Shown: piece after piece, positions 19,860 to 41,255 of the stretch
Layout: the number at the start of each line of letters is the position of its first letter
Position numbering within the stretch: position 1 is the stretch's first letter
Origin: Takakia lepidozioides
Taxonomy: Eukaryota > Plantae > Bryophyta
Assembly: GCA_030704615.1 (NCBI GenBank)
Contig: CM060731.1
Span: 40,610,001 to 40,674,000, forward strand
Direction of reading: 5' to 3'
DNA length: 64,000 bases
The notes under the pieces: generated by a model
What the model was told of the DNA's origin: nothing
Database searches by the model: none
The model's input: only the letters and a program-made list of their open reading frames with translations
Made by a program: the position numbers and the translations under genes

Positions 19860-20950
19860 AAATTAAACTATTCAAACTTCTTAGTCAGCCCAACCTAGTC
19901 ATCCCAACCTACTGCCTGAAGTAGGTCGGAGGGCAACATGGGTGTAACGTGAGATGTGGGATGAAGTCGATCCTGCCCGATGTAAAATGACCATTGCTTG
20001 AGTTCTCTGTAATGCAACGGCCATTTTTTGTCTGTAAAAGGCCACAAGAATGGAGGCATAAGGAATGCCCATGGTCTTGTTTTGGGCCGCTTGATGGGCA
20101 CATGAATGAAGTAGGTCATCAAACTGGCAATGGAGACAACCGAATATCTCTACAGCCAAGGGGATGAAAGTGTCGGTAAGATGTCTGTCCCGATAGCCGC
20201 GTTCCTTAACTTGAGCAGCAACCAAAGCCGCAGAGCCCTGAGAGGATGCCGAACGTGAAAGTAGGTTGGATCGGCAATGACAACATCGGCTAGGGTGTGA
20301 AGACCATCTTTGGACAGGATGATGTCGACACGTAGTCGTGTGGACTGAAGAGTATAAGAAGGGAGGACATGAGATTGCTCTTGCATGACATGGAAACCAG
20401 CCTCTCGCGTAATCGATGTGACAGCGTCTCAGACAACGTCATGGGTGGCGGTGCGATCTCCCCTAGTACATGGACATCGAAGGGGTGGATAGCAAGTGTG
20501 TCGATAGGCTGCTGGCAAACACAATGTCGTAGACCTAACACAAAAGATGCAGTAGCCCAAGTCGCAAACGAAGAGCCGTGGCAAAGATGGGTGATGACAA
20601 GCGAAAAGGGGTGATGGTGGGTCGAGCTGTCAGCCATGTGCCTGCACCTTGCCCTGCACAAGATAGAAGCATGGCACAATGCACATCAAAGAAAGAGCTA
20701 CTGGAAAGCATGCCGGAGAAGGAGTGTCGGTGCACGCGGTCAATTAGAGTCTCATGTACGTGATCAATGCCTTGGGCAAGCAACTGCTCGAATGGAGCTG
20801 GAAGATGCTGTCGCGACCCTTTGCCTTGAGGGCAAGGGGTCGAGACACAGAGGGGCTGCCCCTGTGGTGGGGGCGGTGGCAGCAATAGGTACGGGGGGCT
20901 GAAGCACCCTTGAGTGCCCAAGGCACTCAAGGAGGCAGAGGCACTCACTA
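19860..20950 (-). mobile_element. Degenerate 3' part of a CRE-like non-LTR retrotransposon (Zn knuckle plus restriction-like endonuclease)
   Basis: AGTWLTARP...FATALRLRLGL, CVCQQPID...H, LRVDIIL...LADVVIADPT, AAQVKERGY...FIPLAVEIFG...VALQR. This motif order fits RLE-bearing non-LTR elements; frameshifted. Confidence 0.7.
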
Positions 20951-21202
20951 GGTGGAGCCCCGCACAACGGGTTGCGGTGGGGGTGGCTCCACAAGGGGTG
21001 GTGGTAGCTTAGTGGGACTGGGACTTAGTGGGGGTGGCATCGGACTCACCATGGGGCGGAGACCTTGTGGTGGGAGTCGTGGGGAGTCTTGGGACTCATC
21101 ACGGTCCAATGGGACCGTGGTGGGTGGGCCAAGACTCACCGCGACTCATCACCAAGAATCGAGGGTCTTTGTGGTGGTTCGCCATAAAATGGCATGGTTG
21201 TT

Positions 21203-21539
21203 TGTGAAACCCCCGCGGACAGTCAAAGAAGTATATATAGATAGTAGTAACCCCGAGAACGGTGCAAGGCCGTTGGTGACCAAAAACTAGTGAGTAAGCT
21301 AGTGAGCCGAAAAGCGACCAAGGAGTGGGGAGCTATTCCGGACTGCCATCTACCAAAGGGATATTCCACTAGGCCCAAATTGGTGGAGGGTCTAAAGGAA
21401 GAGTAAAGGAGGACCGTTATGTCCCGATGAGCAGCCGAAGCTCCGAGTTGGCCCGGCGGCCAAGTTGGGAGTTAGGCGCGCGCATCGAAGCGAGTAACTA
21501 TGACTTGAAGGGGAGCTTACCGAAGGGAGGTGCGTGACA
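21203..21539 (+). repeat. Putative 5' LTR of the chromovirus (left boundary tentative)
   Basis: tgtgaaacccc...gtgcgtgaca just before the PBS; TATA-like gtatatatag at 21231. No partner LTR in the window. Confidence 0.55.
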
Positions 21540-24500
21540 CTTGGTATCAGAGCTTAGAGTTCAGTACGCAAACGTCCTTGGGATCGACCTCATCATGGGG
21601 TCGGGCAAGCCAAAGCGAAAGCGGAACGGCCTGAAAGATGATGATCCTGGTGAGCCCGATGGAGGCGACGTGTCACCGAAGCGGCCATTTGAGGAAGCGA
21701 TGCATGCTTTTGAAAGCGAGGCCGCTCAAGAACGGGAGGAATCTGAGGAGTCGGAGCCCGAGGAATTCATGAGAGCTCCGACAGACCAACAGATGTCTCC
21801 CATGCCAGCAGCCTTTTGGGAAGGGTTATTGGCGCAGTTTGGCGGGACGTTGAAGGACGTTGAAGGCGGCTAATGCCACTTCCACTAAGGCAAAGTTTAA
21901 GGTGAAGCCTAAGGAACCCGGCACCTTCGAGGGCGCCCGAAATCGGAAGGCACTCAACACCTGGCTCTTGGAGCTAGAGCAGTACTTCCGGGCGGCCAAG
22001 TTGAGTGACGAGGATTGAGTGGAAGTGGCTCCCACCTATTTGAGGGGCTAAGCTCAACAATGGTGGCAGAAACGCCTTCATGACCAAGGTCCAAACACAG
22101 AAACCTTGAGCTGGAGTGGATTCAAGGAACTTATGAAGAGACAGTTTGTGCCCCTCAACGCGTTTTGGCTCGCCCGGGACAAGATGAGGAATTTGAAGCA
22201 AACTGATGACATTCGGGGATATGTTCAGGCTTTCAATGTATTGTTGCTCGAAGTCGTGGACATGGCAGAACTAGAAATGGTCTTCAACTTTGTGGCGGGA
22301 TTGGCCCCATGGGCTAGGCGAAAGTTGGAGGAGAAGCCACCTAAGACTTTGAACGAGGCCATTGAAAGGGCCAAATGTTTCTCGGATGTCCTTAGGGGCG
22401 AAAGACAAGGCCGTACGGAGCTGAACCACAAGAAGACCCGGCGGGAGGGTGACTCCTTTCGACCGGAAAAGAAGTGGGATAGGCCACGCGGCGTCAATGG
22501 CAGTGGAAATCGAAGGGAGGGCCTTCACACGCCAAGACGACATCCGGTGCTCTGAAAGGAAAATCATGTGCGACGGCTTATGGCGGACAAAAGGCGACCT
22601 TCGATGGAGTGTGATTTATTGCGGGGAGCCCGGGCACATGGCTAAGAAGTGCGTAAAACCCCGACAATTGAACATGACTTGGGCGACCACAGAGCTGTCA
22701 GAAGATTCCATCAGCCGCTTGGTGGAAGCGGTGGTCGCCAAGACTTGCAAGGTAGGCAACTACTCTTGTGAGTTGTATTAGGAAACTGGCGCCCTGCGTA
22801 AAGGGAGTCAGTTATTGTTCGTGAGTGGGATAATTTCCGGAACTAACGTGTCATTGTTGGTGGACACATGAGCGTCACACTCCTTCATGACACCGGCAAC
22901 GGCACGGAAGCTGGGACTCCCGACAAGCGATGTGGGGGCCTCTATTGAGGTGCGTTCTGCTAAAGGACAACCACAATTGGCGACGAGGTTGGCGTTCGAT
23001 GTTCCTCTTCAGCTCGGGAGTTGGGAGGGACCTGAGAACTTCACCATTTGCAAGATCGATGGAGTGGATCTCATTTTGGGGATGACCTTTTTGAGCAGAT
23101 CCGGAGCGGTCATAGATGGCCGAAAGAGAGTAGTCACGCTACCGTGTGGGAATGGTGGCAAAGTTTTACGGATGTCGAAAACGCCCAACCCCGTAGGAGG
23201 GCGAATAAACCTGCTTTCAGCAAGGGAGTGGGCCGTGGAGGAGTCACACGAGCCCCAGTTTTTGCTTTACGTAAAACAAGTGAAGGGAGAAGACGATTGG
23301 GGAGCCGAGCCCAGATTGGATCAAGGGGATTTTGGAGAAATGCTAGGATGTGATGCCGGAGGATTTACCAAGCGGCTTGCTACCGCGAAGGGGAGTTGAC
23401 CACAAGATTGAGGTGATATCGGGATCGGAGCCGCCTGCCAAGGCGCCCTACCGGTTGAGCCACAGAGAGTTGGTCGAGCTGAAGACTCAGCTCAAGGATC
23501 TAATGTCAAAGGGGTACATCCGGCCGAGTAAGTCACCTTACAGAGCCCCGGTGTTATGCGTAGACAAGAAGGATGGGACGTTGCGGATGTGTGTCGACTA
23601 CAGGGCTCTGAATAAGGTGACTATCAAGAACCGGTACCCTTTGCCAAGGATCGACGACCTCTTCGATCGGTTGGCAGGAGCAAAGTATTTCAGCCGGATC
23701 GATTTGCGCTCTGGCTACCATCAAATCCGAGTGGCGGAAGGAGATGAGGAGAAAACCGCGTGCAGGACAAGATATGGTTCGTATGAGTTCTTGGTGATGC
23801 CTTTTGGACTCACCAGCGCACCCGCGGCCTTTAGCACGCTAATGAACAGCCTTTTCCAGGAGTGGTTGGATGACTTTGTCATCGTGTACATCAATGACAT
23901 CCTGGTGTACTCGAAAACAAAAGAAGAGCACCTGGAGCACCTCAAAAGGGTGTTCCAGAAATTGCGGGAAGAGAGGTTGTATGCCAAAGCTTCAAAGTGC
24001 GAATTCGGGGTCACAAAAGTGGAGTTCCTAGGGCATGTGATTACACAGGATGGGATCAAAATGGATGACAGAAAGGTGAGGGCGATCTTGGACTGGGAAC
24101 CTCCAACTTCGGTCCCGGGAGTGTGAACCTTCCTAGGACTCGCCTCCTATTACCGAAAGTATATGAGAAATTTTGCCAAGATCACGGGGCCGCTGTCAGA
24201 CCTTCGGTGTAAATCCAAGGTATGGGTATGGAACACCTTTTGTGGCCAAACTTTTGCCGAGTTGAAGCAGCGGATGGCAGAAGCTCCAGTCTTGAAAATC
24301 CCGGAGTTCGACCGTCCGTTTGAGATTCATGCAGATGCGTCGGACTTTGCGATTGGGGGTGTACTTATGCAAGATGGACGTCCAGTGGCTTACGAAAGTA
24401 AGAAACTAAATGAAGTGAAGCGATGGTGGCCAACGCACGAGAAAGAGATGAAGGCAGTGGTGCATTGCCTTGAGCTTTGGCGTCACTATGGTGGTTTCCA

Positions 24501-24839
24501 ACCCGGTGAAGGTGTTCACGGACAATGTCATGGTGAAGTATTTTGCCACGCAGCCTAAGTTGTCCCCAAAACAACTTAGGTGGCAAGATACTTTGGCGGT
24601 GTTTGACGTGGATATCCAGTACAAACCGGGACGGGACAATGTGGGTGGCCGATGCTTTAAGTAGAAAGCAGCAGCTCATGTTGGTGTGCAGGGGCGAGAC
24701 GGCGCTCCAAAGGAAGATCCGGAAGGCTTACCGAAAGGATGAGATGGCAAAGTCCGTGATGCGGGACTTGAGGATGGGGGTTAAATCGTAGTTCCACTTG
24801 CAAAACGGACTGCTCCGGTACAAGCAAAAGCGTCTCTAC
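21203..24839 (+). mobile_element. Ty3/Gypsy chromovirus-type retrotransposon, 5' part (LTR-PBS-gag-PR-RT-RH-start of INT), pseudogenised and cut by a CACTA insertion
   Basis: PBS TGGTATCAGAGC 21542-21553; gag with knuckle remnant CGEPGHMAKKC; protease VDT*ASHSF; [29 protein letters not shown]...YINDIL; RH HADASDFAIGGVL. Several stops. Confidence 0.9.
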
Positions 24840-25831: not shown

Positions 25832-28462
25832 TGTCGTGCACCTAAGCATCGTGCCACAACATACATCGTTGTCCACCACACAATCTAAGCACACAATCAT
25901 AGAAAGTTATGCCACAATCGCCCCCCTAGCTGGTGATTAGGTCCCTCTAACACCGGATAGCTGACAAGTATCCATCTCAATAAGATCATCGCTTGGTCTT
26001 CAATTGCACAAGTCCCAACACCTGAAGTCGATAGATCAAGAGGCCGGGTGCAAACGTAGCCCCATCGTTAGTCGCCTTCATGCAATCCATGATCTTCAGT
26101 TGAGTATCCATGGCATTGAAGCCCCACTAGCTAGACCTTGGATCACTTGTCCGCCTCACCATTGTCATGCCCACTACCTCTGTCCAAGGCACCGTGGACA
26201 CAACCATTCTCCGATAGGGACCTCCTCAAGTGGCGGTGTCAAGCATCCCATGTGCCACCCCCTTGAGCATTTGTCACACCCCAACATGGTTGCGGCGCCA
26301 CCAGCATGCCCACATAGCATGCAATGCAACCCTGCAGGTACCACTGCAAGGTTGGGATCTATCATCCCATCCACATGTGGAAGGTGACATGGCGTACAAT
26401 TGCGCACATGGTCCTTCCATACCATGTCATCTCAACCTTCCAGAATCAACACTCCTGAAGGCAACACCTCCCTGACCCTTAAAATCACACGTCCTGCTGT
26501 GACATCCAAGGTCGTAGGCGCTGTCTGTTGAAGATACACATAGTCCCCAGGTGGAAACGCCGAACACTTGGCCGATATCCCCCTCCACGTATAGTGGCGT
26601 ACCTCAATGTGTCTCGGTGTTGGGCAATAGCAAGGTTCTCAAAAGCCATAGGTATGACTTCTTGGAACAACTCTGCCCGCTGGGCACAAGTTTGTATCCA
26701 CACATCTGGATCATCAAGGTTGAGAACTATTGCAGCCTCCCTACGAATAGATGCAGGCAAATCCGGCTCTCGGCCGAAGAGAAGAAAGTAAGGTGAGAAG
26801 GAGGCAAGTGAAGCTTGTTTGCTGAACCTATAGCCCATAACTAGCCAAGGCAGTTGAAGGTCCCAATCTCCTAGGTGTCCCTTCTGCAAACCGTACTTGC
26901 GCAAACCTCTCTTGACTGTCTGAGCAACTCTCTCCGCCAAGCCATCAGCCTCGAGATGATCCCGAGATCTATCAAGGCTTGCTCACACAAAGCCTGAAAC
27001 TCCCCCAAGAATTCTCTCCCCCGGTCCGTGAGTACCTCGGCTGGAGCACCAAAATGGCTAAGCACTCGATCTAAGAATGCATACGCAGCCCCCTCACTTG
27101 TCTTGTCAGGCAATGCCACCAGTTCAATCCATTTGGAGAAGTGTTCCACCATCACCAGCACATACTTGTTATGGCAAATCGTCAATGGCAATGGGCCTGC
27201 AAAGTCGAGACTCCAACGATAGCCCAAATCCATAATGGGTAAAGGATGCAATTGTGGAGTAGGGGCGTTGAAAGAAGCCCGCACTCTATCACACACCATG
27301 CACCTTGCCACTAACTGTTGCACATCCGTGTGCATGCCCCGCCACCAATGCTGCCCTTGCAGCAAACTATGAGTGCGCCGCACCCCAAAATATCCCAACT
27401 CCTCACGGGCATGGCGTACCAATCGCGCTCATTATGTTGGATGAGGTACAATCCTCACTCGTCCATCCTCCCATACCCGGAGTAGGTGAGTCCCTTCCCA
27501 CTTGAACCTCTTGGCTTGTTGTAAGATCCGATCTCTCTCCTTAGCAGTCACACTGGCTGTTGTCTCTCATGTACGAAGGTAGGCCAACACTGCTGCATCT
27601 TCATGCACATCCTTAGCACCACCAAGCTCCTCACTGATCTCCGGATCGTCATGCACACCATCTACTTGACCAATGCTATGGGATGGACCAGCTTGAGCTC
27701 CCATTGCTAGGATGCACAAAAAGGCAGATGCGTGCCATCCTGGCACCATCTCCTCATCCGTCTCACCATGCCACCGAGCTCCAGTATCATCATGCTCGCT
27801 CATGCATGGATTACGACTCAACCCATCTGCATCCCAATTGACTATACCGGCTCGATGCACCACCTAGAAGTCGTACTCTTGAAGCATAAGTGCCCACCGT
27901 GCAAGCTTCCATGTAAGCTTGTCTGACTCCATCAACCACTTCAATGGTTGGTGATCCGTGACAAGGGTGAAGAGGTTGCCATAGAGGTAGCATCTAAAAT
28001 GTGTCACTGCCCATACCGCAGCTAGACACTCCCCTTTATATGAGCTTAACTTCGCCTCGGCATCATTGTTCGAGCGGCTGACATATGCCACTACGAACTC
28101 TCTTCCCTCGTCATCCACCTGTGTGAGCACTGCTCCAATTCCCAGCATACTCCAATCCATATGCAGCTGGAAAGGCCGCCTCAGAATAGGTGCAGAAGTC
28201 AATCGAGCCTTGAGTTCCTCAAAGGCTTCCTCCTGTTCCTTCTCCCACTGCCACTCCTGACCCACCTTGGTCAACTTGGTAAGAGCCTTTGCAATGCTGC
28301 TAAATCCCTTGACAAACCATCGATAGTAATTTGCTAACCCCATGAAAGCACGAACTCTTCTAACATCTATGGGGCGTGGAATGCGTGCAATGGCCTCCAC
28401 CTTCGTCTTTTGAATACCCAATCCTCCAGGGTATATCATGTGGCCCAGATACTCAATCTGGT
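25832..28462 (-). mobile_element. DNMT-Gypsy copy B, 3' half (end of RT, RNase H, integrase, PHD finger, PPT, 85-bp terminus)
   Basis: NQIEYLGHMIYPGG continues exactly from KFFHN at 39112. RH LHMDWSMLGIGAVL; INT WSLDFAGPLP...VLTDRGREF...AER; PPT-like ctaggggggcga near 25918-25929; ends ...gtgcacgaca. Confidence 0.9.
26188..26322 (-). other. PHD finger at the integrase C-terminus
   Basis: CMLC-x11-CDKC-x4-HMGC...WLCPRC, the canonical C4HC3 pattern with LTPPLEEVPIGEW. Confidence 0.92.
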
Positions 28463-31400
28463 TGTCAAGTTAAATAAGCACAGTGTGAAAACAGCTAGAA
28501 TAAAACTAGTTATTTGCATTTAACACTTGGATTTAGGTCAAGTGTTAAATCAGATGTCAAGTTTAGTTTGACACCTGGTCCGTCTTATCTTCACGAGAGC
28601 GGCAGTCGCGCGGCTCATCTTTCTCGAGTTGAGCCTGCGCGACCGAGCTCCTTCTTGCGTTTAGAAGCTGTGTGTGCTTATGATGGGAGTGTAGGTTGTT
28701 GTGGGGTGGAGCCCTTATAGCTTGGGGTGCCCCTGGCTCGACTTCTATTTTAAAGAGTGATAGCAATGGATTTCATATTTCTTGTGTTGAGAGTGTGTGT
28801 CCTTTTAGCTTTTGTTTATCACTCGAGAAAGATGCAACTGTATCTAGTTTTCTAGGGCTAAGCTAGATGTTACGTTCCGGTTTTTAAGCACTATTATAAT
28901 ATAGCTTGGTTACGAGAGCTTGCAGGTAGACTGGCTATGTGTGCCTAGTGGAGCATAACAGGAAGGCGGGAACCACTCGAAGTGTCGCTGCAGCAGTTCA
29001 AAGCCAACAATATTCTCGTCCTTCTGGCAGGCACTGCAGCAGGCTGTCTGCCTTGTTCTGATAGCGTGGGGGGCATGTCCTCATCAACAGTTGTACATAG
29101 GGGGCTTCTGCCGCTGCCATGGCTTGTGCTTTTCCCACCTCGGCAGGACTGGAGGATCAGGCTTGACGTAGTAGGAACAAAGCCTCAGGTGCTCTTTCTG
29201 TGCTCTTTCATTGCCAGCCTTTAGTGCACCACCAGCTGCACATACTATCACATGCAGGGAAAACCGACCGTAGCGACCGTAGCTGCCAGGGCCTTGGTGA
29301 ATCCCGCTGCAGGCGAGGATGTTGTGCGGCAGCAGAGGTTGTTGAGTGGTCAGGCCTTGCGAGTGTCGTCCGTGCCCTCCAAGATTGGTGTTGGGGCCCG
29401 TGGATTGGGGTTATCTCTGTTCAACCATGACAAGTGTGCTCCTGTCCCCAAGCTGCCATAGTAGAAGGCTTAGCTATTTTTGCCACTGGGCAATGCCTTG
29501 AGCTTTCAGAATCCTCACCTTGAGTGATCTGGGGACTGGAGACCGGCCATGTCCGCTTGTTTGTCAACGTGAACCCAAATATCTTGCAGTCTTGCTCCAC
29601 CTGCGGGCTGGGTGTGCAGACCTGCTGCAGCTCTGGCTGTTTGGGGCAAACACCTACTGACAAAGAGTGTCCTTGCAGACCAAGCAAATCGTTCTCCGTC
29701 TGAGTTTGATTGATGGGCAGTGACCGCTCAGGCATTCCAACCACTTGACAAGATGAAGATGCTGATTCATTTGCTAATGTGAACCAACTAGGTAAAGAAG
29801 CCTGCAAGGAAGGCTGTTGCGGATCCAGTAAACGACTTCCACTGCAATTTGTTGCTTGATGGCTCTGTTACAATGTGACTACTGTAAGAAAGATTCAGAC
29901 CTGCCAGGCAAGCTATGAACGTTGATATCTGCACTACCACAACTCCCTAGGATTAATACAAGTGCCTGGAGTGAAATGGATAGCTGGAGAACTGCTCAGC
30001 CCATACATTTGGAGTTAAGAGTCATATCATCTACATTGAGGGCGGAGGCCAGGCATCGGAAATGGACCCACCTTGTGTGGAAGCTGATCGCAGGCATGAT
30101 GGAGCGTGTGGAGAACAACCGAGTTGCACTCACTGTCAATACTGGTTGGGGTCGACTTGGGTGGTGATCGCAGGCATGATATGAACATGTGGAGGATGAC
30201 AATGCCAGTCAAGCACAGCGCTACACACCAAGCGTGACCAGAGCACATGCTTGCGCCACAATGAAAGTGGCATGATTGATCAAGTTCTGTTGACAACCAA
30301 CGCTGAGGACTGCGGTTTGTGAAGATCAGGGTTAGGTCAATCCGAATACCTCAAATAGGAGATGCCCCCATTCCGCTGATGCCAAGGACGCGATGATGCC
30401 CTGTGCTGTTGTTGTAAGTCCCGCCATAGCTCTCTCTCTCTCTCTCACGGAAGACTGCTGCTGTGGAGTGCGCTCGGAAATGGGGCAGTAGTGTGCTCAC
30501 AGTGCGAGGGGAACGGCCTCGGGAACCCGTAGGTAACCAGGGAACAGGAACCAAGACAAGTATTTTTAAAAAAAAAAAAAAAAAAAAATCGTTCTTTGAT
30601 CTAATTTAAATTAGATAGAGCCTGTTTGCCATAACTTTGGCCTACCAAGGCCGTTGGACCCAAACTTGCGCAGGACCTACAGAAAAGGGAAATCTACCTA
30701 TCTAAACCTGGTTTCTGTTTTTGGGACTCTGCTAAAAATCTATGGAATTTTTAGAGTGTGAGTGTGCTAAGAAAGATCCACGATCCTATCTCTAGAACCT
30801 GTGTTGGTCTATATGAGAGACAAATTTGTGGATGTACTCCTTGCATGGCTGGGGGAAATGAGGACGTAATTGAAGGGCAGGATTCTTCTCTTAGCCTGTG
30901 CACACAAGGGGACAAGATTTATGTTTCCCAAGGAACTCAGACTGATTTGAGTGGAGAACAGTTGGACGATTTGATTGCATACTGGGAGTCAGGCATTAGC
31001 AGTAGACAACAGACTGCTGTAGTTGGCATTGAGGGCCTCAATATCGCCTTGGACAGTCAGAACTCTGTTGGAGCCAGCAGTTCTGCAGCTGTAGGTGAAA
31101 TACCAAAGTGGGTGAAAGCTAGGCTTGGAACACAGCCAAAGACAGCCCCGGGGACCAAGGTGTTCAGCCACAAGGTCGTGGTGTACTGGAGCAGAGGAGC
31201 AGGAGCTACACAAGTTTGTGCAATCAGACATGGTGGCAACCGGATACGCTCTGCACAGGGCAACCACGAGCGGGTTCATCAGCAATGACATGTTTGTTGT
31301 GCGTGAAGGAGATGCACTCATTCGCAATGAGGACACCCGCACCCGTCTCAAACTTTCGAGTTGAGAGACTTCAGACCCCCCTCTGTTTTCTTTAGTATTC

Positions 31401-34400
31401 AGTGAGCGGGAGATAGGGGAGTATTGCTTTGTCTCTACCTGGCAGAAAGAGGAGGAGGGTTGGTTAGAGCGAGCTACTGTAGCTTGGGACAAGGTAGTGG
31501 CAGGTTTCTGGACATAGATATACCTCCTACACCTTACCATCATGCAGAGCGAGGCACTTTGAGAGAAGTCTGGCATTTGATAGCATAGATCAGGATTAGA
31601 TCTTGCTTGGTTCTATTCTTCCCCTCCATCTCTGTACTATTTTCATTACCATGTACTTGTAGTTGCCAAAGCCTCTCTTGGTGGGGGCCAGTCAGTCCGG
31701 GGTTTTGGGCTGGGATATTCTGCAGGATCAGCATTGCAGCTGGATTTTTGGTGTGGGGGTGTTGATGTTTTGATTTCTTGTGTTTGGATCCCCCCCCAAC
31801 ACCTGCATGCTTGACTGTGCGCCATGTTGGTTTTGTGTGGGCGCTTGCTTTCATAGGGATTAGGCCGGATTTGATCACCGGTCAATCCTAGAGTATGCTG
31901 TCGGTGGTGAGGCTGGAGTGATGACCAGCAAGACCACCAGTGTTTCTTCTATGGTGAGCTGGGTTGATGACCAGCCAACCATAGAGTTCTTGCGGTGATG
32001 CAGGTGCAGGTGCCCTGAGCCATTGGGATATGACCCTTAGACTGCAACAGGTGCCCACCCGTGTCACTATTAGATTAGTACTAGAGCCTTATAGTGTCAC
32101 GTGGAGGAGGTGCACATTGTGAGTGTCATTACGGAGTTATCCAAGGGTTTTGAGGGAGTACGGCTACAGGCAGTAACAGTGAGAGTGGGTTCACAAGACG
32201 AGGTATTCGGTTCAGACCACCTTCACCGCCACCCTCAATTACTGTAGAGTCAGACACAGACTCGAGGCTTCATCAACAGGTGTGCACTTTCATTCGCCAT
32301 TGTTGTGGGAGACATGGAGGAGATGTATGGAGCTACCAAGGGCCTCGTAGGTACTCTGGAGCTGTGGGCACAATCGAGTTGGATGACTTTATCCAGGAGT
32401 TCGAGCTGGTGTGATTTGGCAGCAGATGCGCAATCCACAGCTATTCACCCCATTCATGGCGTGGAAGGGATTGTTCCAGCATTTGGAAGGCCCGCCTATG
32501 GACGATTACCACGAGTTCAGGCGAGGACATGAAGCAGAGATTGAGGAGTGGAGGATGTATTGGTCACCTGACTACGTCTCCATTACTTGAGGCACGACGC
32601 GACCAGTAGCTGCATCAGTACCAATAGCTCCCACTGCCAGCACTAGTAGTGGAGCAAGTAGTGCTGGTACTTCTGTAGGTGGTACCAGTTCAAAAGGTGC
32701 TACTACTCCTCCTGCCACGACTACAACGCATGTGCCTAGATTCAACCCGGTGGTGAAGTTCTTCCAGGAGTTGCGGAGGAACTACCAAGGTATACGGACA
32801 GAGAAGCTGCGAAGTTTGCAAGACTTCCAGCGCAAACCCAGTGAGAGCCTGCCGCGAGAGGCGTACACTCGTATGAGGCGGCGCTTGATAGGTGTGACCC
32901 AAGGGATTACTGAAGCTCAGGCAATCCAGTTTGGTATGGAATTCTGGACAAGGAGCTCAAGAGAAGGGTGCGATGCAGATGCAACCCTGTTACAAGCAGC
33001 CCCAACCCACATTAGCAGAGTGGGTTTCTGCTGGCTGAGCGGATTGAGCTCAACATGGTGGAGGAGCGAGTTGTTACATTGGATTTGGCAAGGACATGCC
33101 TGCACGGGGCACTGTCAGCCCACAGCACAAGGGACTGCCCAACAGCGTGGTCAGGGGGCAAGGTTTCCCAGCCCAAGTTCCATGGAGCTTACAGGGGACC
33201 TCAGGTGCAGAGGCCCGTGGCATCTTTTGCAGGCCAACAGCAACCAGGGGTGATATGTTGGACATGTGGAGGACCCCATGTCAAGAGAGATTGCCCAGAG
33301 AGTGGCAAAAGGCCGGCACAAAGCACACCTGCACAGTTGCAGTGTGGGCATTGCGGCAAGTATGGGCATGGAGATGCCCAGTGTTATGACTTGCATCCTG
33401 AGTTGCGCCCAGGCCAGTTCCAAGGGAACAATGGTGGCGGGGGCGAGGTGGACCAGCCCAAAGAGGACGAGGTGGTCGGGCACGAGGTGCAGGCCAAGGG
33501 CAACTCCACATGGCAAGGACGCGGAGGTCAGGGTGTTGACCAAGGCATGGCCAATCGGCTTCAGCAGCTAGAGCAGAGGCTCGCTGCCATGGCTATAGCT
33601 CAGGCGATACCGGCTCCCAGGCGGGATGGTCCACCTCCTGCTCCTGAGGGAGGAGATATGGGAGGTATGGGATTCATGTGCGGAGCAGCACTACCACTAG
33701 AGCAGGTGGAGTCTGCTGCAGCCATGACTCGAGGAGCAGCACGAGTTCCTGAGCCACGAGGTGCAGAGGGAGTTGGATCCACAACATGGGGAGGCAAGCC
33801 GTCAGGCAAGGCTGCCTCAGTCATTCACCTTGCGGAGACAGTGTCAACGCCATCCATGGCACCTAGTTCTCGCCCGACTGTTACCGAGGCGGAGGTTACT
33901 ATGCCATTGGGAGAGCTACACGTGCAGCACTGACACCTGCTACCAAGGCTAGTGCAGCCGGTGTGTTATTGGGGCAGCCACCTCTGTGTGTCAAGCCCCA
34001 CTGTTCTCGGCAACCATGATTGCGACGCCGGGGTGAGACCAGCTGCAGTTTTCAGACTAGCAGCAACTTCTGTGAGAGTGGGAGGTCACTTCATCTTCTG
34101 CGGAGTTAGTGGAAGGTGTAGTGGCAGAGGGATCCTCGGATTTGAGGGTCAAGACTGCCACGGCTGCGCCTGGCAAGCTGCAGCTGCCAGGTTGACGAGC
34201 TGCCAGCTAGGCCAGCCTTGAGCGCGCCATGGTGACACCTGGAGTTGTCTTGTTAGACAACCAGGATGCATTTTCACTTTGAGTGGGACCGGCAGGCAAG
34301 AAGTACCGGCCACTGCGGGTCTTGTTGGACTCGGGAGCTCAGCCACTGATGTTGGGCAGAGCTGCTATTGCAGGTTTGGGCTCATGGAGGCGGATATGGA

Positions 34401-37400
34401 GCCTTGTCCTTTCCAGATACAGACATCTCTGGGAGGATCAGAGCAGGCTCGGGGCATGACACGGCATCAGTTGGCCATTAGACTGCAGCCGGATCATCCT
34501 ATCGATGGCTCAGTAATGCGAGCCAAGGCCATTGTGACAGACGCGGTCTCTTACGATGTCCTCATTGGTGGGGCAGTGTTATACCATGGGCTTCACCCTG
34601 GATTTTGGGAGGAGTCAGCATTCTACAGGCCTGGATGGCAGTCAGGGGATGGTCGTCGTGCACAGCTCCCTGTGACATTCATTGGGGGTATTGCGGCTGC
34701 CCAGCGGGGCAAGATGCCAACACTAGCCGCCTTTACAGCTGCAGTTAGTTGGCCTGGAGAGTTGCTGGAAGGCAATGCCCATGCAGAGGATGTGCCACCT
34801 CCAGCAGAGCAGGATGACATGCATGGTATGGCGGAGTTGCCTGCCATGGTTGCTCACACTCCATTGTGGGGTACGAGCAAGGATTTGCAGCAGGTGCTGA
34901 TCGACGGGTGCAACAAGCCTGGGTAAGAGGCTTTTGTTCGTCAGAAGAGGAGAGAGTGCGGGTATTGCACCAGACCACCTCAGTTGTCACCATTGGATAC
35001 CACACCTATTGTGTGGCAGTATCCGGATGAAGGCATTGCCTTCTGGACTTGGCGGATCAGCACGGATTGGCTGCTGTGCTACAGGCAGGTGTGCAAGTAA
35101 GGCGGTTACCTGTATGTGGAGAGGGATGAGACTGCACGACGCGTCTCACTGCGCCATGTTGCTCAGTTGGTAAGCAGTACCCTGACTTGTTGCTGTGTCT
35201 GCAGTTCGTGGATACCAACAAGCCTTGCCAGCAGACATTTCCTGTTGGGGCGCGGATTTGGAGCAGGTTGGCTCCATTGATCTGTAGTGGCAGGTTGGCC
35301 CTGCCAAGGGCATTCATCAGCCGGGCATGGCAATGGATTGCGAGACTCGAGGACGGGTCTGTTTTGGGAGATGGTGCGGGTTTTGCGCCACTTGCAGCTT
35401 CATCAAGCTGTATCTCCAGCATACATCTTGGAGAATGTGCCACTGATGGGTGATTCTCGGGCCAGGGTGATGGCCAGTGTGCATCAAGTCCGGTCGTGGC
35501 TTGGGTCAGTCAGCTGCTGCTGGATGCAGCTGCAGTGGGATCACGGGCTCATCGTCCACGGCTTTGGTGGACTAACTTGATGCCACCCGCACTGCTCAAG
35601 CGTGCATTTGATGGGGTGCAGCGGCCAGCACACCTCACCGTGGATGGCATTTTGGACACAGGGAGGCAGTCTCAACGTGTGAGACACGATGACCGTTCGC
35701 CTTTGGCATGGTCAACAGGGTGGGTCAACCACGAGCAGCATTACCTACACTACTCAGCTTCCCAGGATCCCATGCTTTTCGGGATGGTGGACCTGGCCTC
35801 TGTGGGATGCCAGTTGCAACAGTTAGTGGAGCCTAATGCCGACGACGAGAGCGGGCTATGGGATTTTCCACTGGGACCACGGCGGTGCCTTCTCTTTCTG
35901 AGGCATCACGTCGTCAGGTGTTGGGGCAAGCAATGGATCTCAATTGCTTGACCTGGATTATCAGCTTGGCTATGGCTGAGCAACGTAGAGTGCGGAGTGC
36001 ACTTCCCTTGATGGTCTCTCTGCCTACCGAGACGGTACAGGCAGCGAGTGGGGGCGAGCCGGTGAGGACCACGGGGTGTAGACATCCATGGCACACGTGG
36101 GAGGTGCTCGAGGTTCAGAGGGAGTTGGCAGCCAAGGCAGCTGTGATGGATGAGGTTGGGGATTCTTCTCGGGATGAGGAGGTTCTCAATGATGAGATGA
36201 TGGGCAGGATGAGGCCTTGTCATTGACTGAGCAGGAAGGGGAGGTACTGCAAAAGGTTGCAGCATAGCAACCACGGGACGCGTCCTCTACCTCTAAGCCC
36301 ACTGGACTTAAGGTTGCAGTTACGGAGGACAATTGGGAGCCTGACATTGGACCCATTGTCACCGGAGGAGAGAGACGACGTATACGGCGGTTCCTGAGGG
36401 CTTACAGGAATTGCTTTGCCTTCAGTTTGAAGGACTTGGGAGCACTGAAGGGTCAAGAGATCCGTATTGAGTTGGCACTGACACGCCAATCTTTCGGAGA
36501 CCCTATAGATACAGTGACATGGAGAGGTCTTTGATTCAGATGAGGACTCAAGATCTCTGGGAGGCAGGTTTGGTGGAGCTCTCTGGTGGAGAGTATGCTT
36601 CAGCCACAGTGATGCCAGCCAAGAAGGATGTCTATGGCAATTGGACGGAGAGACGTATGTGCGGTGATTACCGGCTGTAAATCGTCAGACCAAGTCCGAT
36701 AGGTATGCCATGCCGACACCAGAGGAGATCTTTGATGCCATTGGGCATTCCAAGGTCTTTAGCACGTTGATTTACGATCCGGATATCACCAGTTGCCGAT
36801 CAAGGAGGCGGAGGCGGATAAACAAAAGACGGCATTCTAGGGGATCAATGAGCACGGGAAGGATTGCCTATACCAGTGGCGGTTCTTACCATTTGGGCTT
36901 AAAAACGCTCCCGCTGAGTTTCAAAGAGTCATGGACAGGATTCTAGCAGGGGTGGAGTTTGCTCGGTGCTACATAGATGACATCATCATCTTTAGTGCTA
37001 CGGTGGAGGAGCATGAGAGACACCTTCAGGGGGTATTTGAGCGCTTGAGGGCGCACGGATTGAAGTTACATCCGGGCAAGTGCAAGTTTTTCCACAACCA
37101 GATTGAGTATCTGGGTCACATGATATCCTGGAGGATTGGGGGTACAGCAGACTAAGGTAGAGTCCATTGCACAGGTTCCACGCCCCACGGATGTGAGCCG
37201 AGTTCGAGCTTTCATGGGGTTAGCAAACTATTACAGACGGTTTGTTAAGGGATTTAGTGCCATTGCAAAGGCTCTAACCAAGCTGACCAAGGTGGACCAG
37301 GAGTGGCAGTGGGAAGATGAGCAAGAACAAGCTTTTCAAGAGCTCAAGGCGAGGTTGACCTCGGCGCCCATCTTGAGACGACCTATCAGGGGGCGTCCTT

Positions 37401-39107
37401 TTCAGCTGCATACAGATTGGAGCATGCTGGGGCTTGGAGCGGTGCTCACACAGGTGGATGATGAGGGAAGAGAGTTCGTAGTGGCTTATGCTAGCCGCTC
37501 GAACAATGCTGCAGAGTCTAAGTATAGCTCATATGAGGGAGAATGCTTAGCTGCAGTGTGGGCCGTGGCACACTTCAGGTGCTATCTATACGGCAATCTC
37601 TTCACCCTTGTCACGGATCACCAACCACTCAAGTGGTTGATGGAGTCAGACAAGCTTACGGGGAAGCTTGCACGGTGGGCACTCATCCTTCAAGAGTATG
37701 ACTTTCAGGTGGTGCATCGACCGGGTTTGGTCAATCGCAATGCAGATGGGTTGAGTCGCAATCCATGCACGAGCCAACAGGATGACACTGGAGCTCGGTG
37801 GCATGGTGAGACGGACGAGGAGATGGTGCCCGGATGGCATGCATCTGCATTTCTGTGTATCTTGGCAGCGGAAGGCCAGGTTGGACCTGCAACAGGGATG
37901 ACTGTAGATCAAGTGTCTGAGGACCCTGAGGCCAGCAATGAGCAAGGTGGCGTCAAAGATATACATGAGGATTCAGTTGTGTTGGACTACCTCCGCACTG
38001 GAGACACGGCAGCCACTGTGACTGCCAAGGAGAGGGATCGGATCCTACAACGAGCCAAGAGGTTCAAGTGGGAGGGGACACCTGCTCCGAGTGTGGGAGG
38101 ATGGTCAAGTGAGGATTGTGCCTCACCCAACACAGCGGGCACGGTTAGTGCGCCATGCCCATGAGGAGTTGGGGCATTTTGGGGTGCGACGCACTCATAG
38201 TCTACTGCAGGGGCAGTATTGGTGGCGTGGTATGCACACAGAGGTGCAACAATTTGTGGCTAGGTGCATGGTGTGTGACAGGTGCGTGCTTCATTCAACG
38301 CCCTACTCCACAATTGCACCCTCTTCCGATCATGGGATTGGGCTACAGGTGGAGTCTTGACTTCGCAGGGCCATTGCCACTGACCATGCGCCACAACAAG
38401 TACGTGTTGGTGATGGTGGAGCACTTCTCCAAGTGGATTGAATTGGTTCCATTGCCTGATAAGGCTAGTGAGGGAGCTGCGTATGCATTCTTGGATTGTG
38501 TGCTTAGCCGATTCGGTGCTCCAGCTGAGGTACTCACGGACCAAGGGAGAGAGTTCTTGGGGGTTTCAGGCTTTGGTGACAAGGCCTTGATAGACCACCG
38601 CACCACTTCTCGGGATCATCTGAGGCCGATGGCTTGGCAGAGAGTTGTTCAGATAGTAAAGAGGGGTTTGCGCAAGTATGGCTTGCAGAAGGGACACCTA
38701 GGAGATTGGGACCTTCAGTTACCCTGGTTTAGCCATGGGCTACAGGTTCAGCAAGCAAGCATCACTCGCCTCCTTCTCACCATACTTTCTTCTCTTTGGC
38801 CGAGAGCCGGATTTGCCTACATCCATTCGCAGAGAAGCTGCTACAGTTCTTAACCTTGACGATCCGGACGTGTGGGCACGTGCATGTGAGCAGCGTGCAG
38901 AGTTGTTCAAGAGAGTCATGCCCATGGCTTTCGAGAACCTTGCCATTGCACAACACCGTGATACGTTGAGGTATGCTACCATACGTGGTGGGGGCTATCG
39001 TCCTGGGGTTCGGAGATTCAACCCTGGCAGACTACTTTATTGTGCATATATGTGTGGTGTGGTTTGGACAGCGATGTAGTTGTGTAGCGATATGTATGCG
39101 CACGACA
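28463..39107 (+). mobile_element. DNMT-Gypsy copy A (10.6 kb): long 5' region, gag, PR, DNMT, RT, RH, INT truncated before the PHD; nested in copy B
   Basis: TGTC...GACA ends flanked by TGGT (28459-28462 and 39108-39111). Gag knuckles CWTCGGPHVKRDC and CGHCGKYGHGDAQC; PR VLLDSGAQP ~34319; RT YIDD ~36970; RH LHTDWS; INT HEELGHFG...CMVC and SLDFAGP. Many frameshifts. Confidence 0.9.
35020..35960 (+). pseudogene. C5 cytosine DNA methyltransferase domain (DNMT3-like) in copy A, frameshifted as assembled
   Basis: AGWPCQGHS (PCQ 35299-35307), YILENVP (ENV 35431-35439, same frame), RAHRPRLWWTNL, MGFSTGTT, RRQVLGQAMDL. Confidence 0.9.
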
Positions 39108-40319
39108 TGGTTGTGGAAGAACTTGCACTTCCCAGGGTGCAATTTCAACCCGTGCGCTCTCAAGCGCTCAAACACCACCTGAAGGTGTCTCTCATGCTCC
39201 TCAACCATAGCACTAAAGATGATGATGTCATCAATGTAGCACCGGGCGAAGTCTAGCCCCGCGAGAATCCTATCCATGACCCTCTAAAACTCTGCAGGAG
39301 TATTCTTCAGCCCAAACGGTAAGAACCGCCATTGGTACAAGCAATCCTTCCCATGTTGGTCAATCCCCCAGAATGCCGTCTTTTGCTTGTCAGCCTCTTT
39401 GATTGGCAACTGGTGGTAACCGGATTGCAAGTCAAATGTGCTAAACACCTTTGCATGCCCAATGGCATCAAAGATCTCCTCTGGAGTTGGCATGGCGTAT
39501 CTATCAGACTTAGTCTGACGGTTCACAGGACGATAGTCCCCACATATCCTTTTTTTTGTCCAATTGCCATAGATATACTTCTTAGCTGGCATCACCGTTG
39601 CCGAGGCATACTCCCCGCCTGACAACTCCTCCAATCCAGCTTCGAACAACTTCATAGTCCGTGACTGGATCAATGACCTCTCCATGTCACTATATCGGTA
39701 GGGCCTTCGAAAGATTGGCGTGTCACTTGCCAAATCAATACGAATCTCCTGACCCTTCAAACTCCCCAAATCCTTCAAACCGAAGGCAAAGCAATTTCTA
39801 TAAGCCCTTAGAAATCGCTGGATCCTCTGTCTCTCTCCTCCGGTGACTGTAGGTCCAACATCTGGTTCCCAATTGTCCTCAGTGACTGCACCCTTGGGTA
39901 CACCAGGCTTGGAGGTAGGAGACGAATCCTTTGGTTGCTAGATAGCAACCTCTTGGGCCTTGTCCGCCCAATCTGACTGTGGCGTAGCCTCCACTTGCTC
40001 CGCCATAGCCACTTTGAGAACATCTTCTGAGCAAGAAACATTCTCAACCTCTTCAAAAAGATTGGCCACCTTTGCCTCTATTTGATCCTCAGTGTATGGC
40101 TCTCCCCACTCCTCATATTGCTGCTTGAGAGATCCAAGGACTCTCTCTTTGCGCATCTCATCCCACATCTGCCATGGGTGTTTACAACCCACACTGTGCT
40201 CGCCCCCACTCACTGCCTCAACCGTCCCGGTTGGCAGGGAGGATGCACCATCCAATGGGAGTGTAGAAGTAGCCATCAATGCTTGCAATCTCCGTTGCTC
40301 AGCCATGCACAAGCCAATT

Positions 40320-41255
40320 ATCCATGTCAAGCAATTTAGATCCATTGCCTGACCCAACACCTAGCGTCATGATGCCTCTGACAGAGCTGGCACAGCTGTA
40401 GTGCCCGTGGCAAAACCCATTGCCCGCTCGCACTCATCCGCATTGGGCTCCACCAATTGTTGTAGCACACTGTCCCAAATCAACCCAGGACCATTGTCTC
40501 GAAAAGAGGGAAAAGCTCATGAGCATAGGCAAGGCTGTACGTGGCTGCCCCACTCGATTGACCACTACTAGAGGTGGACGGTCATCATGTCGCACCCTCT
40601 GTGGTTGCCTCCCTTGGTCCAAAATGCCCTCAACCGTGAGATTGGGTGGCCGTTGAACGGAATCATATGCTCTCTTGAGTAGCTCTGGTGGTGCAAGATT
40701 GGTCCACCACAATCGAGGTTGATGCGCGCGTGATCCCACCGCTGCTGCATCCAATAACACCGCCGATCCAATCCAAGACCGCACCTGATGCACACTGGCC
40801 ATTACCTTGGCCCGAGAATCCCCCATAAGAGGAACATTCTCCAAGATATAGCCTAGAGGTTGCACTTGCCTCGTCTGCAAGTCCCGCAACACTCGCAACA
40901 TCTCCCAAAACAAATGCGATCGTGCATCATGCAAGCCATTCCCATGACCTGCGGGAGAGTGTCCTTGGCAAGGCCATCCAGCTATCACCAAGTCAATGGC
41001 ACCATGCCGGTCCAAATCATCCGCCCCCAGCAATGTAATGTTTGCTGGCAAGGCTTTTTGATGCCCTTGAATTGCTGAGAGAGGCAACAACTCAGGATAC
41101 CGGTGTGTGAGCAAGGCGATGTGGCGCATAGAAATACGCCAAGCTATCTCATCCTTCTCCACATACAAGTACTTGCATACTTTAATCCTTGCTTGCAACA
41201 CTCCTGCAAGCCCAGTGTTCATGCCTCTAAACAGGTCTAGCAAACAAATCCCTGA
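40320..41255 (-). pseudogene. C5 cytosine DNA methyltransferase domain (DNMT3-like) in copy B
   Basis: Motif I GICLLDLFRGMNTG, II YVEKD, IV IDLVIAGWPCQGHS (40973-40965), VI YILENVP (40841-40833), VIII AHQPRLWWTNL, X LGQAMDL. In frame with the protease C-terminal half; stops and a frameshift near the 3' end. Confidence 0.93.

What the first reader, a model, noticed from the sequence alone, without database searches (positions are those of the whole stretch)
25832..28462. The same element adds a PHD finger to its integrase: chromatin reader plus writer in one retroelement
Seen: this block joins 39112 seamlessly (KFFHN|QIEYLGH), so copy B is Gag-PR-DNMT-RT-RH-INT-PHD, with an intact C4HC3 finger where chromoviruses carry a chromodomain. 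Known: PHD fingers commonly read H3K4 methylation state, and animal DNMT3 uses a PHD-like ADD domain for H3K4me0. Inference: the PHD targets integration, and possibly methylation, to a specific chromatin type. That fits both copies lying in a transposon nest rather than the neighbouring gene island.
Basis: partly seen in the sequence, partly recalled or inferred. Interest (0 to 1): 0.88.

Follow-up and report, generated by a model that had tools for sequence, protein, structure and literature searches.

The report
PHD finger on a retrotransposon integrase

Summary
Observation confirmed. Window 28465-25832 (minus strand) continues copy B from 39108 in frame (KFFHN|QIEYLGH). Copy B reads Gag-PR-DNMT-RT-RH-INT-PHD. 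The finger (26329-26195) scores Pfam PHD E 2e-11 and keeps all eight zinc ligands. The copy is dead: five premature stops and two frameshifts lie between RNase H and the finger.

The fusion is a family trait. Intact relatives carry RT-RH-INT-PHD in one ORF (L006-L010). Of the 120 best relatives found with the integrase alone, 110 carry a PHD and none a chromodomain. Of the 120 found with the DNMT alone, 107 do. Named hosts are chlorophyte algae and the liverwort Calypogeia. The finger is under purifying selection (dN/dS about 0.06).

Its nearest solved structures read the unmodified H3 tail (BHC80, BAZ2A, KDM5 PHD1, CHD4, AIRE, ATXR5), and it lacks the H3K4me3 cage tryptophan. Targeting integration to H3K4-unmethylated chromatin is plausible but untested.

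Coupling to the DNMT is doubtful here. A conserved stop with a TMV-type leaky context (TAG CAA CCA) separates the DNMT from RT-RH-INT-PHD.

Gypsy-DNMT3 (2018) and PHD-bearing algal Gypsy elements are published. This scan also found the family on other DNA of this genome.

The parts
26195..26329 (-). PHD finger core (C4HC3), the last domain of copy B's pol
   Evidence: Pfam PF00628 E 2.2e-11, residues 35-79 of the piece 26431-26174. All 8 zinc ligands are invariant in alignment A1. AlphaFold pLDDT is 80-90 over the core, and Foldseek gives probability 1.0 to BHC80, DPF3, BAZ2A and CHD4 PHDs.
26174..26176 (-). Natural stop (TAG) of the polyprotein, five codons after the last Cys
   Evidence: In intact close relatives the PHD is likewise at the very C-terminus: P0159 1092 of 1099, P0184 1037 of 1039, P0183 1029 of 1033.
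26330..26431 (-). Conserved linker between the integrase C-terminal domain and the PHD (WKDHVRNCTPCHLPHVDG...DP.LA..PAG)
   Evidence: The PCHLP motif is at least 90% conserved in 104 sequences. pLDDT is only 54-59, so it is probably flexible.
26432..26434 (-). Premature in-frame TGA between the integrase C-terminal domain and the PHD (a decay lesion)
26435..26560 (-). End of the integrase C-terminal (SH3-like) domain (FPPGDYVYLQ...LILEG), in the same frame as the PHD
   Evidence: It aligns to the GD.VY...G.l.L.G block of 44 intact relatives.
26485..26940 (-). Integrase C-terminal region in a shifted frame. Frameshifts lie near 26545-26620 and 26950-26967.
   Evidence: tblastn of P0159 breaks into HSPs at these points. 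72% identity to P0185 and P0183.
26871..27422 (-). Integrase zinc-binding (H2C2) and catalytic core
   Evidence: Pfam rve E 3e-13 and Integrase_H2C2 E 7e-11. 79% identity to P0185; placed inside the PHD-integrase clade.
27423..27863 (-). RH-INT linker with three in-frame stops (27569, 27434, 27431)
27864..28465 (-). RT end and RNase H of copy B. The stop at 27866 is a lesion.
   Evidence: Pfam RT_RNaseH E 6e-34; junction read.
28466..39107 (+). 10.6-kb insertion that splits copy B. It holds copy A (coding homology 31658-39040), which lacks the PHD.
   Evidence: Self-blastn, junction duplication, tblastn.
39108..39895 (-). RT of copy B, upstream half of the split
   Evidence: Pfam RVT_1; tblastn of P0159 residues 12-280.
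39932..39940 (-). TAG CAA CCA: in-frame stop with a leaky (CAR-YYA) context between DNMT and RT in copy B. Copy A has the same motif at 36265-36273 (+).
   Evidence: The same arrangement is found in L006-L010. Consensus as given in PMC3542737.
40434..43268 (-). Gag and PR-DNMT part of copy B
   Evidence: Pfam DNA_methylase E 1.6e-11. The intact relative L007 ORF1 has zf-CCHC, aspartyl protease and DNA_methylase in this order.
25915..25961 (-). 47-bp block conserved downstream of the PHD stop. It contains an AGGGGGG purine run and is a possible polypurine tract.
   Evidence: 85% identity to L011 2865-2911 and L012 2559-2605, the only non-coding match. Sequence read.

Best explanation
The block is the 3' half of a dead copy of a Ty3/Gypsy retrotransposon of the Gypsy-DNMT3 kind. 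Its pol ends in a PHD finger fused to the C-terminal domain of the integrase.

Shown here:
- The fusion is a conserved, selected trait of a large integrase lineage of green algae and liverworts.
- In that lineage the PHD takes the place that the chromodomain has in chromoviruses.
- The finger is of the sequence and fold class that binds the unmodified N-terminal tail of histone H3 (H3K4me0), not the aromatic-cage class that binds H3K4me3.

Inferred:
- After protease cleavage the mature INT-PHD carries the finger into the intasome.
- The finger tethers the intasome to nucleosomes whose H3K4 is not methylated. These lie away from active promoters, in silent or repeat-rich chromatin, so new copies land where they do little harm.
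- In this subfamily the DNMT is made as part of Gag-PR-DNMT, upstream of a leaky stop. It most likely acts separately from the PHD.
For: - Pfam PHD on the window's own piece, with all zinc ligands present.
- 44 of the 150 best library matches to the finger are single ORFs with INT core, INT C-terminus and PHD in that order. Pfam confirms RVT-RNaseH-(DNMT)-H2C2-rve-PHD in five long ones.
- Intact elements of the window's own subfamily: L007 has ORF1 Gag/PR/DNMT (2251 aa) and ORF2 RT-RH-INT-PHD (1102 aa). L006, L008, L009 and L010 are alike.
- Queried with the integrase only, 110 of 120 best hits have PF00628 and none has a chromodomain. Queried with the DNMT only, 107 of 120 have it.
- Purifying selection on the finger: 18 synonymous against 6 non-synonymous differences between L006 and L007, dN/dS about 0.06, like RT, RH and INT.
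- Nearest solved sequences are CHD4 PHD2, PHF12, KDM5B/KDM5A PHD1, BHC80, DPF2/3, ATXR5, BAZ2A, AIRE and UHRF1.
- The nearest folds are the same set. Several PDB titles state an unmodified H3 peptide (4q6f, 5hh7, 3t6r). No ING, BPTF or TAF3-type reader is in the top 50.
- Family consensus is C..GWH..C, with Gly two positions before the His. By my recollection of ING2 and BPTF, H3K4me3 readers have their cage Trp at that position.
- Precedent: the active Chlamydomonas Gypsy-7a_cRei carries a PHD finger, and its 86 new insertions are intergenic 2.6 times more often than expected (PMC9940879).
Against: - No binding or insertion-site data exist for this family.
- An acidic residue just before the first Cys contacts K4 in BHC80 and AIRE (from memory). 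It is present in the chlorophyte subfamily (D three residues before Cys1) but not in the window's subfamily (AG..C). K4me0 specificity is therefore less secure for this element.
- The window gives no usable evidence on target choice: two copies, one inside the other.
- Where the protease cuts is unknown.
- Enrichment in repeats could come from selection after insertion.
Confidence: 0.55

Rival explanations
1. The PHD works with the element's DNMT as a reader-writer pair, like ADD-DNMT3. It would bring the methyltransferase to H3K4-unmethylated nucleosomes at or near the new copy, so that the element methylates its own DNA or its surroundings.
For: DNMT and PHD are co-inherited: 107 of the 120 best DNMT-only hits carry a PHD. 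In the chlorophyte-type architecture the order is RT-RH-DNMT-INT-PHD, so DNMT, INT and PHD are neighbours and could stay in one mature protein. The PHD class matches the H3K4me0 reading of ADD domains.
Against: In the window's subfamily the DNMT lies before RT, behind an in-frame stop with a leaky context. DNMT and PHD are therefore at opposite ends of a read-through polyprotein that the protease is expected to cut. Some relatives have RH directly next to INT and no DNMT detected in the same ORF, for example Haematococcus P0258. The PHD therefore does not need an adjacent DNMT.
Confidence: 0.15
2. The finger is a structural or protein-binding zinc module and does not read histones. It would help integrase multimerise, bind DNA or RNA, or recruit a host factor.
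For: The PHD fold is also used for non-histone contacts. The K4-contacting acidic residue is not conserved in this subfamily. The linker before the finger is strongly conserved (PCHLP) although predicted with low confidence, which could mark a binding surface of another kind.
Against: Every close solved relative is a histone H3 tail binder. Residues conserved in the family (MLLCD, GWH, PPL..VP.G.W.CP) match the strand and pocket that hold the H3 tail in those structures; the residue-to-function matching is from memory.
Confidence: 0.2
3. The PHD is not part of the element. It would be a captured host exon or a chance juxtaposition in one broken copy.
For: In the window the finger is cut off from the integrase by a stop and a frameshift, and copy A has none.
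Against: Hundreds of uninterrupted ORFs from many sources have INT and PHD in the same order and spacing, under purifying selection.
Confidence: 0.01

Closest known systems
KnitGypsy-Dnmt3 / 'Gypsy-DNMT3' of streptophytes (de Mendoza et al. 2018, PMC5890265)
   Same: A Ty3/Gypsy element with a C5 DNA methyltransferase inside its polyprotein. No ordinary LTR pair is seen here, and the paper also reports an unusual repeat structure.
   Different: The paper's text and held supplements never mention a PHD finger; its figure could not be read. I had no Klebsormidium sequence, so direct kinship was not tested. Here the DNMT sits between PR and RT, behind a stop codon. The named relatives are a liverwort and chlorophytes.
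Gypsy-7a_cRei of Chlamydomonas reinhardtii (Craig et al. 2022, PMC9940879)
   Same: A green-lineage Gypsy element whose Gag-Pol contains a PHD finger. The authors suggest it may bias insertion, and 86 new insertions are enriched 2.6-fold in intergenic DNA.
   Different: No DNMT is reported. The legend lists PHD before INT, so its position may differ. Kinship of its integrase with this family was not tested.
Chromoviruses (for example MAGGY, Tf1, plant Tekay/CRM/Reina)
   Same: A chromatin-reader domain is fused to the C-terminus of a Ty3/Gypsy integrase. For MAGGY it is shown to direct integration to marked chromatin (Gao et al. 2008, as cited in PMC6673714).
   Different: None of about 240 relatives carries PF00385. 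The predicted ligand is an unmodified H3 tail, not H3K9me.
H3K4me0-reading PHD fingers (BHC80/PHF21A, AIRE PHD1, KDM5A/B PHD1, CHD4 PHD2, BAZ2A/B, ATXR5, ORC1b)
   Same: They are the best matches by sequence (E 1e-15 to 1e-8) and by fold (rmsd 0.6-2.0 A over about 50 residues). They share MLLCD, an aromatic residue before the His, and PPL..P.G.W.CP.
   Different: Those are host chromatin proteins. The window subfamily lacks the acidic residue before Cys1 and has a three-residue longer Cys2-Cys3 loop than CHD4 and AIRE.
TE-PHD fusions in general (Kapitonov & Jurka 2003 for CR1; Perez-Alegre 2005 for REM1; Grau-Bove et al. 2022, 10.1101/2021.11.30.470311)
   Same: Recurrent capture of PHD readers by retrotransposons and DNA transposons, proposed to guide insertion.
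   Different: Those surveys do not, in the text I could read, describe this integrase lineage or its constant pairing with a DNMT.

Membership tests
PHD finger (Pfam PF00628) | C4HC3 zinc-ligand pattern with PHD spacing, scoring above the Pfam gathering threshold | tested here: met
   44 bits against a cut-off of 24, E 2.2e-11. Eight ligands are invariant in A1.
PHD finger (Pfam PF00628) | Conserved Trp two residues before the seventh ligand, and the interleaved two-zinc fold | tested here: met
   W76 is invariant. The model has pLDDT 80-90 in the core and Foldseek probability 1.0 to many PHD structures.
PHD finger (Pfam PF00628) | Binds two zinc ions | not testable with these tools
   Needs purified protein.
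Unmodified-H3-tail (H3K4me0) reading PHD class | Closest to known H3K4me0 readers and lacking the aromatic cage Trp two positions before the His | tested here: met
   Family consensus G-W-H, with Gly at least 90% conserved at that position.
Unmodified-H3-tail (H3K4me0) reading PHD class | Acidic residue just N-terminal of Cys1 that contacts the K4 amine | tested here: inconclusive
   Asp three residues before Cys1 in most chlorophyte-type members. Gly, Leu or His there in the window's subfamily. Which residue contacts K4 is recalled from memory, not tested.
Unmodified-H3-tail (H3K4me0) reading PHD class | Binding to H3 1-10 that is weakened by K4 methylation | not testable with these tools
   No H3 sequence could be supplied to complex prediction. 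A peptide assay is needed.
Ty3/Gypsy (Metaviridae) LTR retrotransposon | pol order PR-RT-RH-INT with an rve integrase and an H2C2 zinc domain | tested here: met
Ty3/Gypsy (Metaviridae) LTR retrotransposon | A pair of long terminal repeats flanking the internal region | tested here: not met
   Blastn with word size 9 found no direct repeat between the ends of A or B. The tail of A matches nothing else in the window. Both copies are damaged, and the related contigs L001 and L007 only show end overlaps. So the family's true ends remain open.
Gypsy-DNMT3 (de Mendoza 2018) | C5-DNMT domain inside the polyprotein of a Gypsy element | tested here: met
   PF00145 E 1.6e-11 in copy B and in ORF1 of L007, L008, L009 and L010.
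Gypsy-DNMT3 (de Mendoza 2018) | The DNMT groups with eukaryotic Dnmt3 and with the Klebsormidium elements | not tested
   No reference DNMT set or Klebsormidium sequence was in hand. This belongs to the neighbouring finding s1-467241.
Chromovirus | Chromodomain at the integrase C-terminus | tested here: not met
   No PF00385 in the window piece or in any listed relative.

The most novel reading that the evidence does not exclude
PHD-integrase elements form a large, so far unnamed counterpart of chromoviruses across the green lineage, from Chlorophyceae to liverworts. A finger of the unmodified-H3-tail class is the ancestral integrase tether and is inherited together with a DNMT.

The DNMT has two different positions. 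In the chlorophyte type it lies between RH and INT. In the bryophyte type it lies between PR and RT, behind a TMV-type leaky stop.

If so, the family carries a reader and a writer that are expressed at different doses. It would also be a natural system for testing H3K4me0-guided integration.
Probability: 0.3. Interest if true: 0.6.

Novelty: new member of a known kind. Interest (0 to 1): 0.35.

Why it matters
A histone reader on an integrase is a ready hypothesis for how a retrotransposon chooses safe landing sites. The PHD is constant across chlorophytes and liverworts while the DNMT changes position. For this window itself the value is mainly annotation: one dead, split copy. Intact relatives (L007, L008/L009) and full-length transcripts in EukProt (P0182, P0366) give material for a direct test.

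Tried and rejected
No read-level or expression check of this copy was made, read laying was not used, and no other route was tried.
- The host species could not be named. The tools hide names for the window's own proteins, and host exons are too short for the length-filtered protein search. The only named land-plant relative is Calypogeia fissa. The assemblies GCA_025491035.1, GCA_017884025.1 and GCA_017884045.1 could not be resolved to organisms (one search found no paper).
- I looked for a second PHD, in case copy A were circularly permuted. tblastn of P0159 and P0006 finds only the one at 26189-26620.
- I looked for LTRs or any repeat linking the ends of A and B and found none.
- I asked whether the conserved PCHLP/H..C..CH stretch before the finger is an extra zinc site. 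More likely it is the usual end of the Gypsy integrase C-terminal domain. It has low model confidence and no fold match. This is left open.
- REM1 (PMC1291216) could not be read.
- The leaky stop is not universal. Four relatives (P0178, P0206, P0193, P0269) have DNMT and RT in one ORF.
Full report
**What is in the window**

Self-comparison shows two copies of one element.
- Copy A lies on the plus strand, with coding homology at 31658-39040.
- Copy B lies on the minus strand and is split into 44641-39108 and 28465-about 25832.

The two halves of B meet in frame. B reads ...KCKFFHN at 39112 and QIEYLGHMIYPGG from 28462, and copy A reads KCKFFHNQIEYLGH without a break. The 10.6 kb between the halves is bounded by a short duplication. 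TGGTTGT is shared at both junctions, which fits a 4-bp TSD TGGT and TG...CA ends. So B was split by an insertion that contains A.

Pfam on B's ORF pieces gives:
- DNA_methylase (40434-41807);
- RVT_1 (39032-39778);
- RT_RNaseH (27864-28439);
- Integrase_H2C2 and rve (26871-27422);
- PHD PF00628, E 2.2e-11 (26174-26425).

The end of the integrase C-terminal domain (FPPGDYVYLQ...LILEG) is in the same frame as the finger, with a single TGA at 26434-26432 between them.

The copy is dead.
- Premature in-frame stops are at 27866, 27569, 27434, 27431 and 26434.
- Frameshifts lie near 26950-26967 and 26545-26620.
- There is a further stop in RT at 39286.

The polyprotein's own stop is TAG at 26176-26174, five codons after the last Cys. 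Copy A has no finger. Its integrase homology ends at about residue 974 of the 1099-residue relative P0159, and its last 67 bp match nothing else in the window.

**Is the fusion a family trait?**

- *Library search with the finger.* phmmer of the 85-residue finger piece against 1.84 billion representatives gave 6334 hits. Among the best 150, 44 are single ORFs with integrase core, integrase C-terminus and PHD in that order and spacing. Pfam on five long ones gives RVT_1, RNase H, (DNA_methylase), Integrase_H2C2, rve and PHD.
- *Intact elements of the window's own subfamily.* L007 has ORF1 of 2251 aa (zinc knuckle, aspartyl protease, DNA_methylase) and ORF2 of 1102 aa (RT, RH, INT, PHD). L006, L008, L009 and L010 are built the same way. 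The closest relatives of copy B are P0185, P0183, P0182, P0184 and P0251, at 65-79% identity. P0182 is a complete ORF from a transcriptome assembly in EukProt.
- *Searches that leave the finger out.* With the integrase region alone, 110 of the 120 best hits carry PF00628 and none a chromodomain. With the DNMT domain alone, from a relative of the other architecture, 107 of 120 carry it.
- *Named hosts.* These are Haematococcus lacustris, Tetrabaena socialis, Pleodorina starrii, Scenedesmus sp., Monoraphidium neglectum, Chromochloris zofingiensis (by its JGI tag) and the leafy liverwort Calypogeia fissa.
- *Conservation.* All eight zinc ligands and the Trp before the seventh are invariant in 18 diverse members and at least 90% conserved in 104.
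- *Selection.* Between L006 and L007 the 45 finger codons differ at 18 synonymous and 6 non-synonymous positions, dN/dS about 0.06. This is in the range of RT, RH and INT.

**What kind of PHD finger is it?**

By sequence, the nearest solved chains are CHD4 PHD2, PHF12, KDM5B and KDM5A PHD1, Lid PHD1, BHC80/PHF21A, DPF2/3, ATXR5, BAZ2A, AIRE PHD1 and UHRF1.

An AlphaFold model built on 104 sequences has pLDDT 80-90 over the finger and 54-59 over the linker. Foldseek returns the same set at rmsd 0.6-2.0 A. Several entry titles name an unmodified H3 peptide (4q6f BAZ2A, 5hh7 ORC1b, 3t6r UHRF1, 5vab ATXR5-H3). No ING, BPTF, TAF3 or PHF8-type H3K4me3 reader appears in the top 50.

The family consensus around the His ligand is C..GWH..C. 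By my recollection of ING2 and BPTF, H3K4me3 readers place their cage Trp two positions before the His. Here that position is a conserved Gly. The aromatic residue directly before the His is the usual core residue, as in BHC80, AIRE and KDM5.

One feature is not secure. The acidic residue before Cys1 that contacts K4 in BHC80 and AIRE (from memory) has an Asp counterpart in the chlorophyte-type members but not in the window's subfamily. I read the finger as an H3-tail binder that is not an H3K4me3 reader and is probably of the K4me0 type. Confidence is moderate.

**How it most likely works**

Shown: a selected reader domain sits at the integrase C-terminus, where chromoviruses have a chromodomain.

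Inferred: mature INT-PHD tethers the intasome to nucleosomes without H3K4 methylation. New copies would then avoid active promoters.

This idea has a published precedent. The active Chlamydomonas element Gypsy-7a_cRei carries a PHD finger. Its 86 new insertions are intergenic 2.6 times more often than expected, and the authors suggest targeted insertion (PMC9940879).

The window itself adds nothing to this point. Two copies, one inside the other, cannot separate target choice from selection after insertion.

**Reader plus writer?**

The DNMT and the PHD are clearly co-inherited, but their arrangement differs between two groups.
- In 53 of 147 proteins the DNMT lies between RH and INT (RT-RH-DNMT-INT-PHD, often with a long tail after the finger).
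- In the window's group RH abuts INT, the DNMT lies before RT, and the finger is the last domain.

An integrase tree places almost all members of the first kind in one half and almost all of the second in the other. The label for 'RH next to INT' needs 11 changes on the tree against 38.7 on shuffled labels (0 of 500 shuffles as low). The deepest split is weakly supported and the tree is unrooted. The PHD is common to both halves, so it is at least as old as either DNMT position.

In the window's group the DNMT is followed by an in-frame stop with the six-base context CAR-YYA.
- TGA CAA CTA in L006 and L007.
- TAG CAA CCA in L008, L009 and L010, in copy A (36265) and in copy B (39940, minus strand).

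This is the consensus for leaky termination in tobamoviruses, and it also works after UGA (PMC3542737). By chance the six bases are expected once in 512. It is not universal: four relatives have DNMT and RT in one ORF.

If the stop is leaky, Gag-PR-DNMT is the main product and RT-RH-INT-PHD a minor read-through product. That makes a physical DNMT-PHD unit unlikely in this subfamily. It remains possible in the other one.

**Comparison with what is known**

- Gypsy-DNMT3 was described from Klebsormidium in 2018. That paper's text and held supplements do not mention a PHD, and its figure could not be read.
- A 2026 preprint speaks of 'streptophytes (Gypsy-DNMT3)' and describes other elements that combine methyltransferases with chromodomains.
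- PHD fingers in retrotransposons are long known. A survey of 172 genomes found PHD and Chromo to be the domains most often fused to TE domains.
- The ESM Atlas holds a cluster of integrase-PHD proteins recorded mostly from molluscs. This is a lead only.
- I found no text that describes this integrase lineage, the constant PHD-DNMT pairing, the two DNMT positions or the leaky-stop context. My literature access is partial.

**Earlier notes of this scan**

The same family, with the same reading, was noted many times on other DNA of this genome. Several follow-ups filed it as Gypsy-DNMT3 in a liverwort- or moss-type genome. I used these as leads. My own searches agree on the family and on its spread from green algae to liverworts.

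**Verdict**

The chromatin-targeting reading is reasonable, already proposed for related elements, and untested. The copy in this window is a dead, split member of a known kind. Interest is moderate to low for this locus and somewhat higher for the family-level picture.

Noticed in passing
window 39940-39932 (-), 36265-36273 (+); L006 4131-4139, L007 8169-8177, L008 5408-5416, L009 4837-4845, L010 2475-2483: An in-frame stop followed by CAA-CYA (TAG CAA CCA or TGA CAA CTA) separates DNMT from RT in five lineages of 55-80% protein identity. This is the tobamovirus-type CAR-YYA leaky-stop context and suggests programmed read-through. Gag-PR-DNMT and RT-RH-INT-PHD would then be made at different doses. 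Four relatives lack the stop.
   Followed up: partly
proteins P0053, P0054, P0057, P0066, P0073, P0080, P0131 against L007, L008 and window copy B: There are two architectures of DNMT-bearing PHD-integrase elements. One is RT-RH-DNMT-INT-PHD with a long tail (named hosts are chlorophytes). The other is PR-DNMT-(stop)-RT-RH-INT-PHD (window; liverwort relative). They occupy different halves of an integrase tree. This means either one capture followed by a move, or two captures.
   Followed up: partly
window 28466-39107: Copy A is bounded by a target-site duplication, yet its coding homology stops inside the integrase C-terminal domain at 39040. Its last 67 bp match nothing else in the window, and no LTR pair is found for A or B. 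This belongs to the neighbouring finding s1-467755.
   Followed up: partly
window 25915-25961 (-): This is the only non-coding stretch conserved with the closest relatives (85% to L011 and L012). It lies about 215-260 bp after the PHD stop and holds an AGGGGGG run. It may be the polypurine tract, marking where the 3' terminal repeat begins.
   Followed up: no
P0073 / P0174 residues about 1184-1223 (L001): A G-patch domain (PF01585, E 3e-7) lies between DNMT and integrase in some chlorophyte-type members. It is also in the precomputed domain lists of P0244, P0296, P0305 and P0383.
   Followed up: no
P0344; P0152: Database misfilings of this family. A 1974-residue polyprotein is filed under a 'Minisyncoccia bacterium' MAG. 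A PHD fragment is named 'cbb3-type cytochrome oxidase cytochrome c subunit'.
   Followed up: no
window 49051-51356 and 57923-60239: Direct repeats of 2.3 kb at 99.3% identity bound another, young Gypsy element on the minus strand (RT and INT hits at 51834-55116). A further truncated Gypsy lies at about 20000-24800 (+).
   Followed up: no
window 18505-18867 (-) and 1463-1828 (-): Host exons. One looks like the N-terminus of a D-type cyclin with an LxCxE motif (LYCAED). The other may be a fragment of an intraflagellar-transport-type protein. Both are read from the translation only.
   Followed up: no
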